IMG/VR virus record: IMGVR_UViG_3300042879_006196 | Location: 248,001-312,000 of that record | Reading direction: 5' to 3' (one strand) | DNA length: 64,000 bases | Part shown: one piece after another, positions 18,227 to 55,171 of the stretch | Position numbering within the stretch: position 1 is the first letter of the stretch | How the letters are laid out: each line of letters begins with the position of its first letter | Notes under the pieces: generated by a model | Databases searched by the model: none | Seen by the model: the letters and a program-made list of their open reading frames with translations, nothing else | What the model was told of the DNA's origin: nothing | Made by a program: the position numbers and the translations under genes

Positions 18227-19849
<1,623 letters not shown>

Positions 19850-48949: not shown

Positions 48950-50182
48950 ATGTCATTAATTGAAAAAGGAAAACTTAGAATTGAATGGGCAGCAAGAGAA
49001 ATGCCTGTTCTTGAATCAATCTATCAAAAATTTCTCCAAGAACAACCTTTCACTGGGAAAAGTGTTGCTGCTTGTATGCATATCACCACTGAAACAGCAA
49101 ATCTAATTAAAACTTTAGCTGCGGGAGGGGCTACAATTTATCTTTGTGCTTCCAATCCACTTTCTACACAAGATGACGTAGTTGAGGCTCTCAATTCTGA
49201 AGATAATATTCATGTATTTGCCAAACATGGTGATGACACTGAATCCTACTATTCTCATATCAAAAAAGTTTTGAGTTACAAGCCACATCTTGTTATGGAT
49301 GATGGCTGCGATTTGGTCAATTATTTGTATACTCAAGAGCCACTTCTTTTAGAAAACGTAATTGGTGGAACCGAAGAAACTACTACAGGAGTTCAAAGAC
49401 TCACTGCTATGGAAAAAGATGGCATTTTGAAATATCCAATTATTTGTGTTAATGATGCCCTCACAAAACATATGTTCGATAATCAGTATGGCACAGGACA
49501 ATCAACAATAGATGGTATTATACGTGCGACAAATATTCTTCTTGCTGGAAAAGTAGTGGTAGTGGCTGGGTATGGTTGGTGTGGAAAAGGTTTAGCTGCT
49601 AAAGCCAAAGGTATGGGCGCTAGAGTGGTTATTACTGAAGTGGATCCAATTAAAGCATTGCAAGCTCACATGGATGGATTTGATGTTTTAACAATGGATG
49701 TAGCTTCTGCTTGTGGTGAAATATTCATTACTGTGACTGGTAACAAAAATGTTATTGACGTTAAACATTTCAAACAAATGAAAGATGGAGCAATTTTATG
49801 CAATTCTGGTCATTTTGATTCTGAAATAAACATTAAAGGTTTAGAAGAATTTTCATTAAGCTTTAGACCTGTAAAAGATAATATAGAAGAATATACCTTA
49901 GAAGAAGGTAGAAAAATTTATGTACTTGGTGAAGGAAGGCTTGTAAATCTTGCGTGTGCAGAAGGACATCCGTCGTGCGTTATGGATATGTCTTTCGCTA
50001 ACCAAGCTTTATGTGCACAATTTTTATGTGCAGATTCAAATTTGCAACCAGGCTTGTATACAGTGCCAGCGGATATTGATCAACTTGTTGCTGAACTTAA
50101 ACTGCAATCCTTAGATTTGCAAATTGATGAACTTACTGAAGAGCAATTCAACTACATTAATAGCTGGCAAGAAGGCACTTAA
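48950..50182 (+). CDS. ahcY: adenosylhomocysteinase (SAH hydrolase), short type
   Basis: CMHIT.ETA, SNPLSTQD, EETTTG, K..FDN.YGTGQS, GYGWCGKG, N.GHFD.EI, GRLVNL.CA.GHP. Confidence 0.97.
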   Translation: MSLIEKGKLRIEWAAREMPVLESIYQKFLQEQPFTGKSVAACMHITTETANLIKTLAAGGATIYLCASNPLSTQDDVVEALNSEDNIHVFAKHGDDTESYYSHIKKVLSYKPHLVMDDGCDLVNYLYTQEPLLLENVIGGTEETTTGVQRLTAMEKDGILKYPIICVNDALTKHMFDNQYGTGQSTIDGIIRATNILLAGKVVVVAGYGWCGKGLAAKAKGMGARVVITEVDPIKALQAHMDGFDVLTMDVASACGEIFITVTGNKNVIDVKHFKQMKDGAILCNSGHFDSEINIKGLEEFSLSFRPVKDNIEEYTLEEGRKIYVLGEGRLVNLACAEGHPSCVMDMSFANQALCAQFLCADSNLQPGLYTVPADIDQLVAELKLQSLDLQIDELTEEQFNYINSWQEGT

Positions 50183-51195: not shown

Positions 51196-51637
51196 TATGC
51201 GAGATAAACTGTGGGAATCATTCCCTGATTTAATTTTTTTTGATGGTCCAGTAAACGACACATCAATTGTTGGCTTAGCAATGATAGAAGATGATGGGTA
51301 CCACATTGTCACTGTTTATGACAAAGAAATGGTTTTAAGAGACCTAGTTAATTCTAGTGCTGCCGAATCAATAGAAGAAGCAGAGTTAGATGCAATTGAA
51401 TGGTTTGATTTCAATATTATTGGCGCATATGTTGGGACATTCACTCCTCTTTTCATTTGTGAAGATTTAGATGAAGATTGTGCAGCTATGAGGTTTTCTG
51501 AAAGCTATAGTGATTATTTTAGCCTTAAAGATGTAAATACTTTACTTGAATGCTATGATTTAATTAATTCAACAAATAAATTTTTATTTGTTCCTTTGAA
51601 TGATGCAAATAATTTAGCTGAATTTATAAAAATATGA
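51185..51637 (+). CDS. conserved phage hypothetical protein
   Basis: VYD..........EA.EWFDFNI.GAY.G..TP.F pattern. Confidence 0.6.
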   Translation: MNTDMRDKLWESFPDLIFFDGPVNDTSIVGLAMIEDDGYHIVTVYDKEMVLRDLVNSSAAESIEEAELDAIEWFDFNIIGAYVGTFTPLFICEDLDEDCAAMRFSESYSDYFSLKDVNTLLECYDLINSTNKFLFVPLNDANNLAEFIKI

Positions 51638-51984
51638 AAGAAAGGTGGATTTTATATTTTGATGGTGCATGCCCTCTGTGTATCAAATCCCAAAATTCTT
51701 TGAAAAAGTATTTACCTGAACACATCAAACTCACTGCTGTAGATTTGAATAGTCAAATAGCTAAAAATAAAGGATATGATTTAAAACAGGTTGTGCTTGA
51801 GACTACAGAAGGTGTTTTCTTTGGGTACAATGCTTGGTTAAAGATTTTAGCCCAAACAAAATTTGCGTGGGCTACTTCTTTATTTTTCAGACCGTGTTTT
51901 ATTGTGTGTTATTTTTTAATATCAAAAAACAGAAAAATAATTTCAAAGTTTTTCATTAACTTTATCAAAAATTATACTTTTTAA
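51634..51984 (+). CDS. DCC1-like (DUF393) thiol-disulfide oxidoreductase family protein
   Basis: LYFDGACPLC (DxxCxxC). Confidence 0.8.
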   Translation: MKERWILYFDGACPLCIKSQNSLKKYLPEHIKLTAVDLNSQIAKNKGYDLKQVVLETTEGVFFGYNAWLKILAQTKFAWATSLFFRPCFIVCYFLISKNRKIISKFFINFIKNYTF

Positions 51985-54447
51985 CTCGTCATATTTTTTA
52001 CCTTGTTCAAGTTCTGGCAAAATATCTGAAAATTCACTTGAATTAATTACATCATACATCGCTTGTTCTTCTATTCCTCTAAGTTCTTGAGGCATATCAC
52101 CTTGTGTTTTTAAATTATCATCTGTAGTTGGAGTGGGCACTCTTGGAAACAAATTTTCCGTATCTTCTGAATCAATAATTGTATCTGAAACTGGCATGTC
52201 ATTTGCTAAGTTTCCTATTTCATCATCAATTAATTTTGTTGCTTCTGCTGATTCACTATCAGTATTTTCATCAAGTATATCTGCAATTCTTGAAAGTCGC
52301 ACGATGTTTTTTAGAATATTTGCTTTTGTGATGTTGTACATTAATGTTTTATTCTCCAATAAATCAAAAGAACCTGTTTTTAAATTTTTACTCAAGTTAA
52401 AAGAAACCACTGTGTTTTCACAAAAAGTGAGTAGTTCTAATTCTTTATCATCTTTATTTTTGATATCATTGCACCACTGAATTATTTTTTCTAAATCATT
52501 ATCTGATAATCTTAGTTGCTTGATACAATTTTTTAATTCGTTAATCTTTTGAAATTTAACTTTGAATGAAGGAGTACTTTGTCTCATTTTGTTTATTTCT
52601 TCTTTGAGAGAGCTTAGTTCTTGTTCATTTTCATTCAATGAATTGAGTTTAAATCTTATGTTTTTTTCTTGTTCAATTATAATTCTTTGCAGTTCTTGAT
52701 TATAAATTGCATAATTTGATTCTCCAAGTACTGTTCTAATCAAATTAAGATATTTTGATTTCATTTCCTTTGGAGATAAATCAAAATAAAAATTTCTCAA
52801 CATAGATTTTATTTGATTTTTTTGATCTTTTATTGCTGGAAATGTTTTAGAAATTTTATCAATTACACTATCGTCAATCATCCAAGGTTTAGTTATTTTA
52901 ATTGATTCTTCTAATATTTTTCTAGAAATTGCTGCATCCAGTTCTTTTTCTGTCGCAAGTATGAATGAAAGTGCACTAGATTTTATTTTTATTTCAGCAT
53001 TGTTAGGATTATTGATGTTTAAAAAATTGGATAAAAATTGTTTTTGTTCATCAGTTTGATTACATGATTTATACCAAGTGATTAATCTTCCCAAAGGGGT
53101 ATCACGTTGTGGCGCTCTGTTTACCGTAAAAAGGATATTCTTTTTTGTTAATTCCTTTTGAATCATTTTTATAATTTCTTCTGGATTGTCGGTTTTTGGC
53201 TCAGTAAAATGTATTATGTTACAATTAATTGTTTTTGCGAAATTATCTTCTGCATTTACTTTGACTTTGTGTTTAAAATCATATTGAGCAACTTTAAATT
53301 CATTTTTACTTAATGATTTATATTCATCAATGTTTGGGTTTTCAGATCTTTGTTGCAAAAAAGAATCAAATTTTCTTCGATCACTTTCACTTAAGGTGTA
53401 TCCGAAATATTCACCAACAAGCATTATTTCCGTTTCAATTTCAGGAATTTCATTTTGTTTTATTTCATTCAAATCGCTTTTTAACACATCGCAAACCACA
53501 ATGAAGTCAATTAAAAAGTATTCATAAATTGATTCTTCTGGTGATGGAATTTTCATTTTTGAGGGAATATATCTTATATTAAAAACTTCTTTTAAAGTAG
53601 ATAAAACTTTTTTTTCTTTGAGTGATGAATATGTAAATTTAAATTTTTCTGGAAATTCTTCTACAAATAATTTATTTTCTTTTAATGGTTGAATTCTTTC
53701 TTTCAAAAGTTTCAAATCTTCACCATATAAATCACACAAATATGCATAAAATTTTTCTTCATTTCTATCTGATTTATTATAGGCTGTATTTAGTTTTTGG
53801 AGTATTTTTGTATTATCATCTACCATAGAGCGATAGATTTGTTCAGGTGCTTCTTCAGACCAAAAATCAAAACCCAAGTCATTTAATTGTCTTTTAAAAG
53901 TTTCTTTTCCAAATTCAGTGTCAATTGTTTTTATTCGAGACATGTTTGTTTCTGAACTTCTTCCCAGCATCTCATTTAATTTATTTAGAACTTCAGATTT
54001 TTCCACTGACTTCATGTCTAATTTTTTTTCAAGATCTTCTCTGTTATATTTCACTGATAATTTTGCTAAAATTTCTTCAGGTAATTGACCATTAATCAAA
54101 AATTTGTTCCACCATTGATCAGATTTATATTTAAAAACATTTTTTGACATTGTGCCAGCTAAATCTTTAATCTCGTCATCAGTGTAATTTTCTATGCCAG
54201 GTGTTTTATTTATTTTTTCTTTGACTTTTTCTTCTATTATTTTATTTCTTTCGAATCTTAAAAAATTTTGAATTATACTTAAATCAATATTGTTAATCAA
54301 ATCATAAATAAAATTTTGTGTTATTGTAACTTTGTGTTCAATTATTTCTTTAAAAATTTCTTCTGTGATTACAGTAGCCCAATATTGTTTTTGAGCTTCG
54401 GTTAATTTTGTAGCTGCAAACAAAAGTTTATTTTTTATATCTAACAC
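51943..54447 (-). CDS. large hypothetical protein (834 aa)
   Basis: GTG 6 nt after TAAAAT; helical and coiled-coil rich; LSRIADILD motif near the C-terminus. Confidence 0.65.
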   Translation of the reverse strand: MLDIKNKLLFAATKLTEAQKQYWATVITEEIFKEIIEHKVTITQNFIYDLINNIDLSIIQNFLRFERNKIIEEKVKEKINKTPGIENYTDDEIKDLAGTMSKNVFKYKSDQWWNKFLINGQLPEEILAKLSVKYNREDLEKKLDMKSVEKSEVLNKLNEMLGRSSETNMSRIKTIDTEFGKETFKRQLNDLGFDFWSEEAPEQIYRSMVDDNTKILQKLNTAYNKSDRNEEKFYAYLCDLYGEDLKLLKERIQPLKENKLFVEEFPEKFKFTYSSLKEKKVLSTLKEVFNIRYIPSKMKIPSPEESIYEYFLIDFIVVCDVLKSDLNEIKQNEIPEIETEIMLVGEYFGYTLSESDRRKFDSFLQQRSENPNIDEYKSLSKNEFKVAQYDFKHKVKVNAEDNFAKTINCNIIHFTEPKTDNPEEIIKMIQKELTKKNILFTVNRAPQRDTPLGRLITWYKSCNQTDEQKQFLSNFLNINNPNNAEIKIKSSALSFILATEKELDAAISRKILEESIKITKPWMIDDSVIDKISKTFPAIKDQKNQIKSMLRNFYFDLSPKEMKSKYLNLIRTVLGESNYAIYNQELQRIIIEQEKNIRFKLNSLNENEQELSSLKEEINKMRQSTPSFKVKFQKINELKNCIKQLRLSDNDLEKIIQWCNDIKNKDDKELELLTFCENTVVSFNLSKNLKTGSFDLLENKTLMYNITKANILKNIVRLSRIADILDENTDSESAEATKLIDDEIGNLANDMPVSDTIIDSEDTENLFPRVPTPTTDDNLKTQGDMPQELRGIEEQAMYDVINSSEFSDILPELEQGKKYDELKSIIFDKVNEKL

Positions 54448-54496
54448 AATCTTATTTTAAAAGAAATTTAATCAAAAACCTACCGTATATATAATA

Positions 54497-55171
54497 ATGA
54501 TTATAAGCTGTTCGTACAAAAAAAGAGTGGGCAAAGATACATTTTGCCGAATTGTTAAAGAACTTTATCCTGATAAGAAGGTGGAAAGAGTAGCTTTCGC
54601 TGATGAGCTCAAAAAAGAATTAGACACAATCTTACTTATACCTAATGGCTTATCAAGAAATATGTTTGAGGATGACAATGTAAAAGAAATTGCCAGACCT
54701 TTACTACAAGGATGGGGCACAATTCGTAGAGAGTTTTGTGATAAGAATTATTGGGTAAAACTGGCTTTTTGGAGAATGCAAGACCCAGACACAATCTACA
54801 TTATCACTGACGCAAGATATTTAAATGAAATCGAATTTATCAACTCTCAAGGTGGGCACACTGTTCATATTAAAAGGGATTTACACGGATATAAGGCGTG
54901 GCTCAAAAGTCTTTCACATACTAAGTATTCTTGGGCTTCACACATTCTGCTCAGACCGTTTTTGATTGTGTTTTATCAGATTGTGTCTAGAAATAAAAAG
55001 TTTTTGAGCAAATCTGCAGACCCATCATCTTCTCATTCTTCAGAAACTGAATTAGACAATTATCATCATTTGTTTAAATACACAATCGAGAATAATGGAA
55101 CAGAAGCTGAGTTCAAAGAAAAAATTAAAATAGTTGTAGAAGATATATTTAAGCAGGAAAAAAAAATTTAA
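54497..55171 (+). CDS. deoxynucleoside monophosphate kinase (T4 gp1-like) with a 43-aa insertion
   Basis: KRVGKDT, FAD.LK, R.LLQ.WGT..R, WV, ITDARY.NE, H.SETELD. Confidence 0.8.
   Translation: MIISCSYKKRVGKDTFCRIVKELYPDKKVERVAFADELKKELDTILLIPNGLSRNMFEDDNVKEIARPLLQGWGTIRREFCDKNYWVKLAFWRMQDPDTIYIITDARYLNEIEFINSQGGHTVHIKRDLHGYKAWLKSLSHTKYSWASHILLRPFLIVFYQIVSRNKKFLSKSADPSSSHSSETELDNYHHLFKYTIENNGTEAEFKEKIKIVVEDIFKQEKKI

What the first reader, a model, noticed from the sequence alone, without database searches (positions are those of the whole stretch)
51823..55015. dNMP kinase carries a 43-aa insert homologous to the C-terminus of the DCC1-like gene 3 kb away
Seen: DCC1-like 51823-51951 GYNAWLKILAQTKFAWATSLFFRPCFIVCYFLISKNRKIISKF aligns without gaps to kinase 54887-55015 GYKAWLKSLSHTKYSWASHILLRPFLIVFYQIVSRNKKFLSKS. 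The insert sits between VHIKRD and HSSETELD, normally a short linker (recall). The DNA has diverged while the protein pattern and frame are kept, implying selection. Inference: intragenomic domain capture gave the kinase an amphipathic, possibly membrane-binding or partner-binding helix pair.
Basis: partly seen in the sequence, partly recalled or inferred. Interest (0 to 1): 0.6.

Follow-up and report, generated by a model that had tools for sequence, protein, structure and literature searches.

The report
Phage kinase carrying a borrowed gene fragment
A jumbo phage's nucleotide kinase carries a real 44-residue in-frame insert copied from the tail of a neighbouring redoxin-like (DCC1-like) gene. 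The copy came from a sister phage lineage, is present in only some otherwise near-identical phages, and shows no clear sign of having gained a function.

Summary
Kinase residues 130-172 (window 54884-55015) align without gaps to DCC1-like residues 63-105 (51820-51951): 48% identity, E 4e-14.

About 40 homologous kinases lack the segment. So do phage contigs 98.8% identical to the window over 9.5 kb, where the insert is the only gap.

The interpretation needs three corrections.
1. The resident DCC1-like gene is not the donor. The insert is 81% aa / 86% nt identical to the DCC1-like gene of a sister phage lineage (L012, L016), against 48% / 58% for the resident gene. The filled kinase allele then reached the window's lineage by homologous recombination.
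2. The captured piece is a fragment, not a domain. It holds only the helices after the last strand of a thioredoxin-like fold and has no CxxC.
3. The "selection" argument compared the insert with a distant orthologue of its donor. On the insert's own branch, changes are mostly non-synonymous (omega about 0.4-0.6, against 0.07 for DCC1). The AlphaFold2 (AF2) model of the insert is of low confidence.

The insert lies at the LID position of the NMP-kinase fold, a site that tolerates insertions. The best reading is a tolerated fragment insertion made by illegitimate recombination, now an indel that is still polymorphic (segregating) in a recombining jumbo-phage population. An adaptive role is not excluded.

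The parts
54497..55171 (+). T4 gp1-like deoxynucleoside monophosphate kinase gene, 224 aa, insert-bearing allele
   Evidence: ORF. Pfam PF21448 and PF04275. PHROG 139, E 2e-35. Profile match to PDB 1dek, E 2e-20, and 3ch4. Foldseek finds 3ch4, adenylate kinases and 1dek. Family invariants are kept: G12 K13 D14 T15, D105, R107, E111, R127, S182, E183.
54884..55015 (+). The insert: 44 codons (HGYKAW...FLSKS) homologous to codons 63-106 of a 107-codon DCC1-like gene. Net gain over empty alleles is 129 nt, because one Ala codon of the target was replaced.
   Evidence: Absent from L011, L030, L031 and L032, which are 98.6-98.8% identical to the window on both sides. 86% nt identical to L012:5103-5234. 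AF2 pLDDT 35-49, after strand 121-126 and before HSSE.
54866..54883 (+). Left flank (HIKRDL): end of the strand that precedes the LID position, including the nearly invariant R127
   Evidence: Junction alignment. Empty alleles read RD-L/S-A-V/F-D at this point.
55016..55036 (+). Right flank (ADPSSSH): resumption of the kinase, leading into the conserved HSSE motif
   Evidence: Some filled alleles keep the target's Val codon here (SKS-V-D in L023/L024).
51634..51984 (+). Resident DCC1-like thiol-disulfide oxidoreductase gene, 116 aa, intact. It is an orthologue of the donor, not the donor itself.
   Evidence: PF04134, 36.6 bits, profile 1-110/113. CxxC motif DGACPLC is invariant in the family alignment. 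Only 58% nt / 48% aa identical to the insert over the shared segment.
51820..51951 (+). Segment of the resident DCC1-like gene (codons 63-106) homologous to the insert
   Evidence: It corresponds to helices 65-73, 78-81, 86-98 and 100-106 of the DCC1 model.
51943..54447 (-). 834-aa ORF of unknown function between the two genes (context only). It overlaps the DCC1-like 3' end by 42 nt.
   Evidence: no Pfam family reaches its cut-off. The same ORF is in the empty-allele contigs L030-L032.

Best explanation
The window is part of a 347-kb jumbo phage genome. In the ancestor of a sister lineage ('B': L012, L016, L023, L025), 132 nt of the DCC1-like gene were copied in frame into the dNMP kinase gene. 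The copied stretch is codons 63-106 of 107, stopping one codon before the last. The kinase gene lies about 3 kb downstream on the same strand. The copy replaced a single Ala codon in the short loop between the HIKRD strand and the HSSE motif. The mechanism inferred is illegitimate recombination or a replication template switch. The donor gene stayed intact, so the event was duplicative.

The loop is the LID position of the NMP-kinase fold, where length variation is tolerated. The kinase core and all its conserved residues are unchanged. The filled allele then spread by homologous recombination among co-circulating relatives. It now sits on several kinase backbones, including that of the window's lineage ('A'), whose own DCC1-like gene is a diverged orthologue. 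In both lineages filled and empty alleles coexist.

The inserted peptide is a fragment of a thioredoxin-like domain without its sheet or CxxC. It has evolved under relaxed constraint. It is most likely a tolerated, nearly neutral surface excursion of the LID loop rather than a new functional module.

Shown: the homology, the donor lineage, the polymorphism, the mosaic backbones and the insertion site. Inferred: the mechanism of copying, the order of events and the near-neutrality.
For: Homology. Insert vs resident DCC1: E 4e-14, 48%. Insert vs sister-lineage DCC1 P0079: E 9e-24, 81% aa, with 18 of 132 nt different against 55 of 132 for the resident gene. All cluster-3 DCC1 proteins score 34-36 of 44 identical and every other DCC1 cluster scores lower.

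Direction. The C-terminal helices belong to the Pfam DCC1 profile and to all 28 aligned DCC1 homologues. The segment is absent from about 40 kinase homologues.

Polarity. The insert shares derived states with cluster-3 DCC1 (His at codon 12, Val at 29, Gln at 32, Arg at 36). It also keeps four ancestral codons that cluster 3 has changed.

Polymorphism. L011 and L030-L032 are 98.6-98.8% identical to the window with the insert as the only gap. B-lineage contigs L016, L017, L019 and L020 are empty, while L012 and L023-L026 are filled. The 90%-identity clusters hold 20 filled and 44 empty members.

Introgression. Window and L012 are 69-80% identical in neighbouring genes but 93% in the kinase. Window and L016 are 99% identical just 3' of the insert. 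Kinase alleles are mosaics, and P0092 combines an A-type N-terminus with a B-type C-terminus.

Site. The AF2 model places the insert after strand 121-126 and before HSSE, with core pLDDT 85-95. The linker aligned at this site is 8 residues in 1dek and 19 in 3ch4. Long-type adenylate kinases have a LID 27 residues longer than short-type ones (PMC8197361).

Relaxed constraint. The insert stem has 7 N and 3-5 S changes, the DCC1 branch 1 N and 4 S. Within filled alleles the insert has 4 N: 3 S, the flanks 26 N: 60 S. The otherwise conserved Cys of RPC and Arg of NRK are lost. The insert's pLDDT is 35-49.
Against: Omega on the insert branch (about 0.4-0.6) is below 1. With 11 changes it cannot be told apart from 1 (binomial P about 0.18, my calculation), nor, with confidence, from moderate constraint.

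The filled allele has persisted through about 14% nt divergence from its donor. It is common (roughly a third of observed alleles) and occurs on several backbones in two lineages, which would also fit a benefit.

One change, Ile to Ser, looks like adaptation of a formerly buried position to solvent.

The copying mechanism is not shown. The junctions have at most a 5-nt ATTTA microhomology, offset by one base, on the left, and none on the right.

The true donor allele may not have been sampled.

Confidence: 0.62

Rival explanations
1. Adaptive LID extension. The captured helices were kept because they change the kinase usefully, for example by altering lid dynamics or substrate range, mediating oligomerisation or docking to a partner or membrane, or evading a host factor that recognises the kinase.
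For: The frame is intact in all 20 filled cluster members. The filled allele is found on A, B and mosaic backbones and in many samples. Omega is below 1 on the insert stem and within the filled population. The Ile-to-Ser and other changes are all derived on the insert side. The LID is functionally important in NMP kinases (PMC8197361).
Against: Empty alleles are about twice as common. They coexist in genomes 98.8% identical to the window, so the insert is not required. An intact frame is enforced anyway by the essential HSSE motif and C-terminal part downstream. Constraint is several-fold weaker than in either parent gene. Diversity in the insert (0.6-4.4%) matches the adjacent 3' kinase part in both allele classes (1.5-2.7% downstream of the insert), so there is no sweep signal. 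The AF2 model gives no confident packing. The piece is a fold fragment.
Confidence: 0.25
2. The insert damages the enzyme. Filled alleles would then be decaying or non-catalytic kinases that persist because the gene is dispensable.
For: A hydrophobic 44-residue fragment sits next to the nearly invariant Arg127 at the LID. One empty allele (L018) is itself split into two ORFs, hinting that the gene may be dispensable.
Against: All family-invariant residues are retained in filled alleles. No stops or frameshifts occur in any filled allele. The flanks of filled alleles show mostly synonymous variation, 60 S: 26 N. The L018 split may be an assembly error.
Confidence: 0.08
3. A self-mobile element (mini-intein, intron, bypass element, or an in-frame palindromic repeat like those of Rickettsia) that has landed in both genes.
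For: Patchy presence among near-identical genomes. An 8-nt inverted repeat lies near the two ends of the insert. IS605-type TnpB genes move around this neighbourhood in sister contigs.
Against: The genome holds only two copies, and one of them is the native C-terminus of the DCC1 fold. There are no terminal inverted repeats or target duplication at the borders. No intein splice residues are present (sequence). RNA folding is no better than shuffles, z -1.5 and -0.5. No other protein of 123-392 aa carries the segment. The patchiness is explained by the mosaic, recombining kinase alleles.
Confidence: 0.03

Closest known systems
Phage T4 gp1 deoxynucleoside monophosphate kinase (PDB 1dek; Pfam PF21448) and animal-type phosphomevalonate kinase (PDB 3ch4; PF04275)
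   Same: Same P-loop NMP-kinase fold and the same motifs: GKD(T) P-loop, D-x-R-x-x-x-E after strand 3, Arg at the end of strand 4, and the H-x-S/T-E motif.
   Different: The linker between strand 4 and the H-x-S/T-E motif is 8 residues in 1dek, 19 in 3ch4 and 6-9 in this phage clade. It is 50-52 residues in the filled alleles. In this clade the first Gly of the Walker A motif is replaced by Tyr.
Short-type versus long-type adenylate kinases (LID length variants)
   Same: Both are length polymorphisms at the LID position of the same fold. Long-type AK has a LID 27 residues longer than the short type, yet both are active (PMC8197361).
   Different: The AK LID insert is an old, structured, family-wide module. 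Here the insert is recent, derived from an unrelated gene, polymorphic within a population and modelled with low confidence. That the site is equivalent to the LID is inferred from the order of secondary-structure elements, not from a superposition.
DCC1-like / YuxK (DUF393) thiol-disulfide oxidoreductases, Pfam PF04134
   Same: The insert is homologous to the last 44 residues of these proteins.
   Different: It lacks the N-terminal sheet and the CxxC, so it cannot be a redox domain. The conserved Cys after Arg-Pro and the Arg of Asn-Arg-Lys are substituted.
Phage gene mosaicism by illegitimate recombination followed by homologous exchange (the Hendrix-type model; from my own knowledge)
   Same: A non-homologous join creates a novel in-frame junction, and homologous recombination in the flanks then spreads it among relatives.
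   Different: Here the new join lies inside an enzyme's loop, and the donor is a fragment of a neighbouring gene of the same genome. Donor, empty site and filled site are all still observable.

Membership tests
T4 gp1-like dNMP kinase (PF21448 / PHROG 139): the whole ORF 54497-55171 | Profile match above the curated threshold | tested here: met
   PF21448, 36.4 bits against a cut-off of 27.1; PF04275, 34.4 against 33.8. PHROG 139, E 1.7e-35. Family profile vs 1dek, E 1.9e-20.
T4 gp1-like dNMP kinase (PF21448 / PHROG 139): the whole ORF 54497-55171 | P-loop G-K-D/S-T and the conserved Asp/Arg/Glu after strand 3, Arg after strand 4, and Ser-Glu motif | tested here: met
   G12 K13 D14 T15, D105 and E111 are invariant; R107, R127, S182 and E183 are nearly invariant. 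All are present in the window protein.
T4 gp1-like dNMP kinase (PF21448 / PHROG 139): the whole ORF 54497-55171 | NMP-kinase fold | tested here: met
   The AF2 core has pLDDT 85-95. Foldseek finds 3ch4 (TM by target 0.71), adenylate kinases and 1dek at probability 1.00.
T4 gp1-like dNMP kinase (PF21448 / PHROG 139): the whole ORF 54497-55171 | Phosphorylation of dNMPs | not testable with these tools
   Needs an enzyme assay of the filled and empty natural alleles.
DCC1-like thiol-disulfide oxidoreductase (PF04134): ORF 51634-51984 | Profile match above the gathering score, N-terminal D-x-x-C-x-x-C, and a thioredoxin-like fold | tested here: met
   36.6 bits against 27.8, profile 1-110/113. D10 G11 A12 C13 P14 L15 C16 are invariant. 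The model of orthologue P0079 resembles NrdH, glutaredoxin and thioredoxin; the top hit has probability 0.99 but a weak E-value of 0.016.
DCC1-like domain: the insert 54884-55015 | A complete domain with the CxxC redox motif | tested here: not met
   It covers only donor residues 63-106, the helices after strand 4. Pfam finds nothing in the insert alone.
Self-mobile in-frame elements (intein, intron, palindromic repeat) | Multiple copies or copies in unrelated genes; terminal repeats or target duplication; splice residues or a structured RNA | tested here: not met
   Two copies only. No other carrier protein of 123-392 aa. No terminal repeats or duplication at the borders. RNA z-scores -1.5 and -0.5. 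The borders read L|H...S|A, not Cys/Ser...His-Asn.
Long-LID NMP kinases (an analogy, not a family assignment) | Insert located at the LID position, after strand 4 of the core sheet | tested here: inconclusive
   The order of secondary-structure elements in the AF2 model and the HMM alignments to 1dek and 3ch4 place it there. No residue-level superposition on an adenylate kinase was available.

The most novel reading that the evidence does not exclude
The captured DCC1 helices are a young functional module. A natural LID graft would change how the phage dNMP kinase is regulated, assembled or localised, or would let it escape a host factor. It would be spreading between diverged jumbo-phage lineages because it is beneficial. 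With donor, empty and filled alleles all extant, this would be a rare snapshot of protein innovation by reuse of a gene fragment.
Probability: 0.2. Interest if true: 0.6.

Novelty: new variant of a known kind. Interest (0 to 1): 0.38.

Why it matters
This is a clean natural example of how proteins gain length. A fragment of one gene was pasted in frame into a loop of a neighbouring enzyme, and the donor, the empty site and the filled site all still exist in closely related genomes.

The natural filled and empty alleles differ by little else: the genomes are 98.8% identical. That makes them a ready-made pair for asking what a large graft in the LID loop does to an NMP kinase.

The case also shows how fast homologous recombination moves such an allele between phage lineages that are only 70-80% identical elsewhere. 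And it warns that the nearest paralogue in the same genome need not be the donor.

If the insert proves neutral, the finding is an instructive but ordinary case of phage mosaicism.

Tried and rejected
- Scans of IMG/VR viral contigs with the kinase, the DCC1-like protein and a 28-nt degenerate pattern from the insert found no relatives. Relatives came instead from the protein word search and from contig look-ups.
- The cultured-phage collection has no near DNA match and no DCC1 match. It holds only distant kinases under 35% identical, without the insert.
- Pfam on the insert alone found nothing. The homology rests on the phage DCC1 alignment.
- A word search restricted to the insert found only the filled-kinase cluster among proteins of 123-392 aa. 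DCC1 proteins are too short for that length window.
- Mobile-element reading: no extra copies, no terminal repeats or target duplication, no RNA structure beyond shuffles.
- I looked for a recombination tract around the insert by mapping window-vs-L011 differences. The differences are patchy over the whole 6 kb, not specific to the insert.
- I first read the low diversity of the insert relative to the 'flanks' as a sign of recent spread. A sliding-window analysis showed that the whole 3' part of the kinase is equally low in both allele classes, and that only the 5' half is diverse. The sweep argument was dropped.
- An 8-nt match between the empty junction of L011 and an internal site of the L012 insert was considered as a deletion scar. 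I rejected it because the empty junction matches the ancestral Ala-Val/Phe-Asp of all other homologues.
- One script call returned no answer and was repeated.
- Complex prediction was not used, because I make no binding claim. The large representative search was not used, because the word search had settled the question.
- Only genetic code 11 was used.
Full report
**Setting.** The window is bases 248001-312000 of a 347-kb virus record that is about 30% G+C. It encodes a GroEL-like chaperonin, virion structural and tail-fibre proteins with PHROG matches, and many sugar and nucleotide-metabolism genes. It is therefore an uncultivated jumbo phage. No cultured phage in the collection is close to it.

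The two 43-residue peptides are read exactly as quoted.
- The DCC1-like ORF (51634-51984, 116 aa) matches Pfam PF04134 above its threshold over profile positions 1-110 of 113.
- The kinase ORF (54497-55171, 224 aa) matches PF21448, PF04275, PHROG 139 and PDB 1dek and 3ch4.
- BLASTP between the two whole proteins gives one ungapped match, 62-105 against 129-172, 48% identity, E 4e-14.
- The genome holds no further copy, as protein or as DNA.

**It is an insert, and a young one.** The word search found 46 kinase clusters. All but one are 173-219 aa, with only 6-9 residues between the HIKRD strand and the HSSE motif. One cluster (P0003, 20 members, the window's protein among them) carries the segment.

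Contigs L011 and L030-L032 have the window's gene order: DCC1-like 116 aa, an 834-aa ORF, the kinase, then a 941-aa ORF. They are 98.6-98.8% identical to the window over up to 9.5 kb, and the only gap is the 129-nt insert. The segment is therefore neither a normal part of the family nor an assembly artefact. It recurs, with variants, in contigs from at least nine other samples.

**The donor is not the resident gene.** Contig L012 belongs to a sister lineage, which I call B. It is only 69-80% identical to the window in neighbouring genes. It has the same local gene order, a filled kinase, and a 107-aa DCC1-like gene (P0079).
- The C-terminus of P0079 is 81% aa identical to the insert, E 9e-24.
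- At DNA level it differs from the window's insert at 18 of 132 positions (86% identity), against 55 of 132 for the resident gene.
- All members of that DCC1 cluster (P0108-P0121) score 34-36 identities out of 44. Every other DCC1 cluster scores less, and the window's own type scores 21-22.
- Codon by codon, the insert shares derived states with this cluster (His 12, Val 29, Gln 32, Arg 36). It also keeps four ancestral codons that the cluster has since changed. The insert is thus a sister of the cluster-3 DCC1 C-terminus.

The direction of copying is clear. These helices belong to the DCC1 profile and to all 28 aligned DCC1 homologues, and they are foreign to the kinases. Both filled genomes (window, L012) keep an intact DCC1-like gene, so the event was duplicative.

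**The junction.** Empty alleles read RD-(L/S)-A-(V/F)-D. Filled alleles read RD-L-[44 residues]-(A/V)-D. The simplest account is that the single Ala codon was replaced by donor codons 63-106 of 107, a net gain of 129 nt. Filled alleles L023 and L024 still carry the target's Val codon. Donor and target lie on the same strand about 3 kb apart. Microhomology is at best a 5-nt ATTTA on the left, offset by one base, and there is none on the right. Illegitimate recombination or a template switch is therefore an inference, not a demonstration.

**How the window got the insert.** Kinase alleles are mosaics of an A-type and a B-type N-terminus, middle block and C-terminal tail. The insert is present or absent on A, on B and on mixed backbones; P0092, for example, has an A-type head, a B-type tail and the insert. 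The kinase is 93% identical between the window and L012 while its neighbours are 69-80% identical. The 113 nt just 3' of the insert are 99% identical between the window and the empty B contig L016. Differences between the window and L011 are patchy over the whole 6 kb. This is a recombining population in which the insert is still polymorphic. The filled allele arose in B and reached A by homologous exchange.

Diversity among filled alleles is 0.6-4.4% inside the insert. That is similar to the adjacent 3' kinase part in both allele classes (1.5-2.7% downstream of the insert) and far below the 5' half (10-13%). I see no sweep signal. My earlier impression is withdrawn.

**What the piece is.** The AF2 model of the donor-type DCC1 (mean pLDDT 76) shows strands and helices in the order b1-a1-b2-a2-b3-b4, followed by helices at 65-73, 78-81, 86-98 and 100-106. 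Foldseek places it with NrdH, glutaredoxin and thioredoxin, weakly but consistently. The captured residues 63-106 are therefore only the helices after the last strand. They include neither the sheet nor the CxxC, so the piece is a fragment and not a domain.

In the kinase model the core is confident (pLDDT 85-95). The insert is not (35-49). It emerges after strand 121-126 and returns at HSSE. By the order of secondary-structure elements this is the LID position of the NMP-kinase fold. The aligned linker there is 8 residues in 1dek and 19 in 3ch4. Adenylate kinases come in short and long LID types that differ by 27 residues (PMC8197361). All family-invariant kinase residues are retained.

That comparison mostly measures purifying selection between two DCC1 orthologues. 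I made three more direct comparisons.
- Polarised with outgroups, the insert's stem branch has 7 non-synonymous and 3-5 synonymous changes, omega about 0.4-0.6. The DCC1 branch has 1 and 4, omega about 0.07.
- Within eight filled alleles the insert has 4 N and 3 S polymorphisms, against 26 N and 60 S in the flanks (Fisher p = 0.2).
- The otherwise conserved Cys of Arg-Pro-Cys and Arg of Asn-Arg-Lys are replaced.

Constraint on the insert is thus several-fold weaker than in either parent gene. With 11 changes it cannot be told apart from neutrality (binomial P about 0.18, my calculation). An intact frame is no argument either, because the essential HSSE motif lies downstream.

Against pure neutrality: the allele has lasted through about 14% divergence from its donor, it is common, and one change (Ile to Ser) suits a newly exposed position.

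**Rivals.** A self-mobile element is rejected: two copies only, no terminal repeats or target duplication, no splice residues, no RNA structure, no other carrier protein. A damaged enzyme is unlikely: all motifs are kept, there are no stops, and flank variation is mostly synonymous. An adaptive LID graft remains possible, at about 0.25.

**Verdict.** This is a dNMP kinase variant with a LID-loop insert made from the 3' end of a DCC1-like gene. It was captured in a sister lineage, passed on by recombination, and is most likely tolerated rather than functional. It is a new variant of a known kind, of moderate interest. Its main value is as a natural filled/empty pair for experiment.

**Limits.** The codon counts are small. 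The true donor allele may not be sampled. The equivalence of the site to the LID is inferred from topology. Only genetic code 11 was used, and no step needed referral.

Noticed in passing
L016:3162-4349, L019:3162-4349, L020:2512-3777, L023/L024/L025:2634-3842 (not in the window): IS605-family TnpB/OrfB genes (PF01385 + PF07282, 395-421 aa) sit at three different places in this neighbourhood in sister-lineage contigs. One replaces the DUF7831 gene, one lies just upstream of the DCC1-like gene, and one lies just upstream of the filled kinase. The elements are evidently active in these phages. No link to the fragment capture is shown.
   Followed up: partly
L018:8085-8623: An empty kinase allele is split into two overlapping ORFs (108 and 86 aa) in one Logan contig. 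This is either a frameshift, hinting that the gene is dispensable, or an assembly error.
   Followed up: no
window 54497-54545: In this phage clade the Walker A motif reads S-Y-K-K-R-V-G-K-D-T. The first Gly of the classical G-x4-G-K motif (Gly in T4 gp1 and in human PMK) is Tyr, and this is nearly invariant in the clade.
   Followed up: partly
window 51943-51984: The resident DCC1-like gene has a 9-residue C-terminal extension compared with its 107-aa orthologues. Its 3' end overlaps the convergent 834-aa ORF by 42 nt. In the sister lineage the corresponding minus-strand region is two ORFs (183 aa plus 698 or 715 aa).
   Followed up: no
window 54497-54710 versus 54711-55171: Nucleotide diversity among kinase alleles falls from 10-13% in the first 215 nt or so to 2-9% beyond, in both filled and empty alleles. 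This suggests recent homogenisation of the 3' part across lineages, or different recombination histories for the two halves.
   Followed up: partly
window 18230-19849 and 48950-50182: The phage encodes a GroEL-type chaperonin (PHROG 5725, E 3e-143) and an S-adenosylhomocysteine hydrolase (PF05221 in the sister contigs). These are auxiliary genes typical of very large phages.
   Followed up: no
window 54901-54908 / 55002-55009: A perfect 8-nt inverted repeat lies near the two ends of the insert. Three of the changes derived on the insert branch create it, and the donor lacks it. Predicted folding is no better than shuffles, so it is probably chance.
   Followed up: yes
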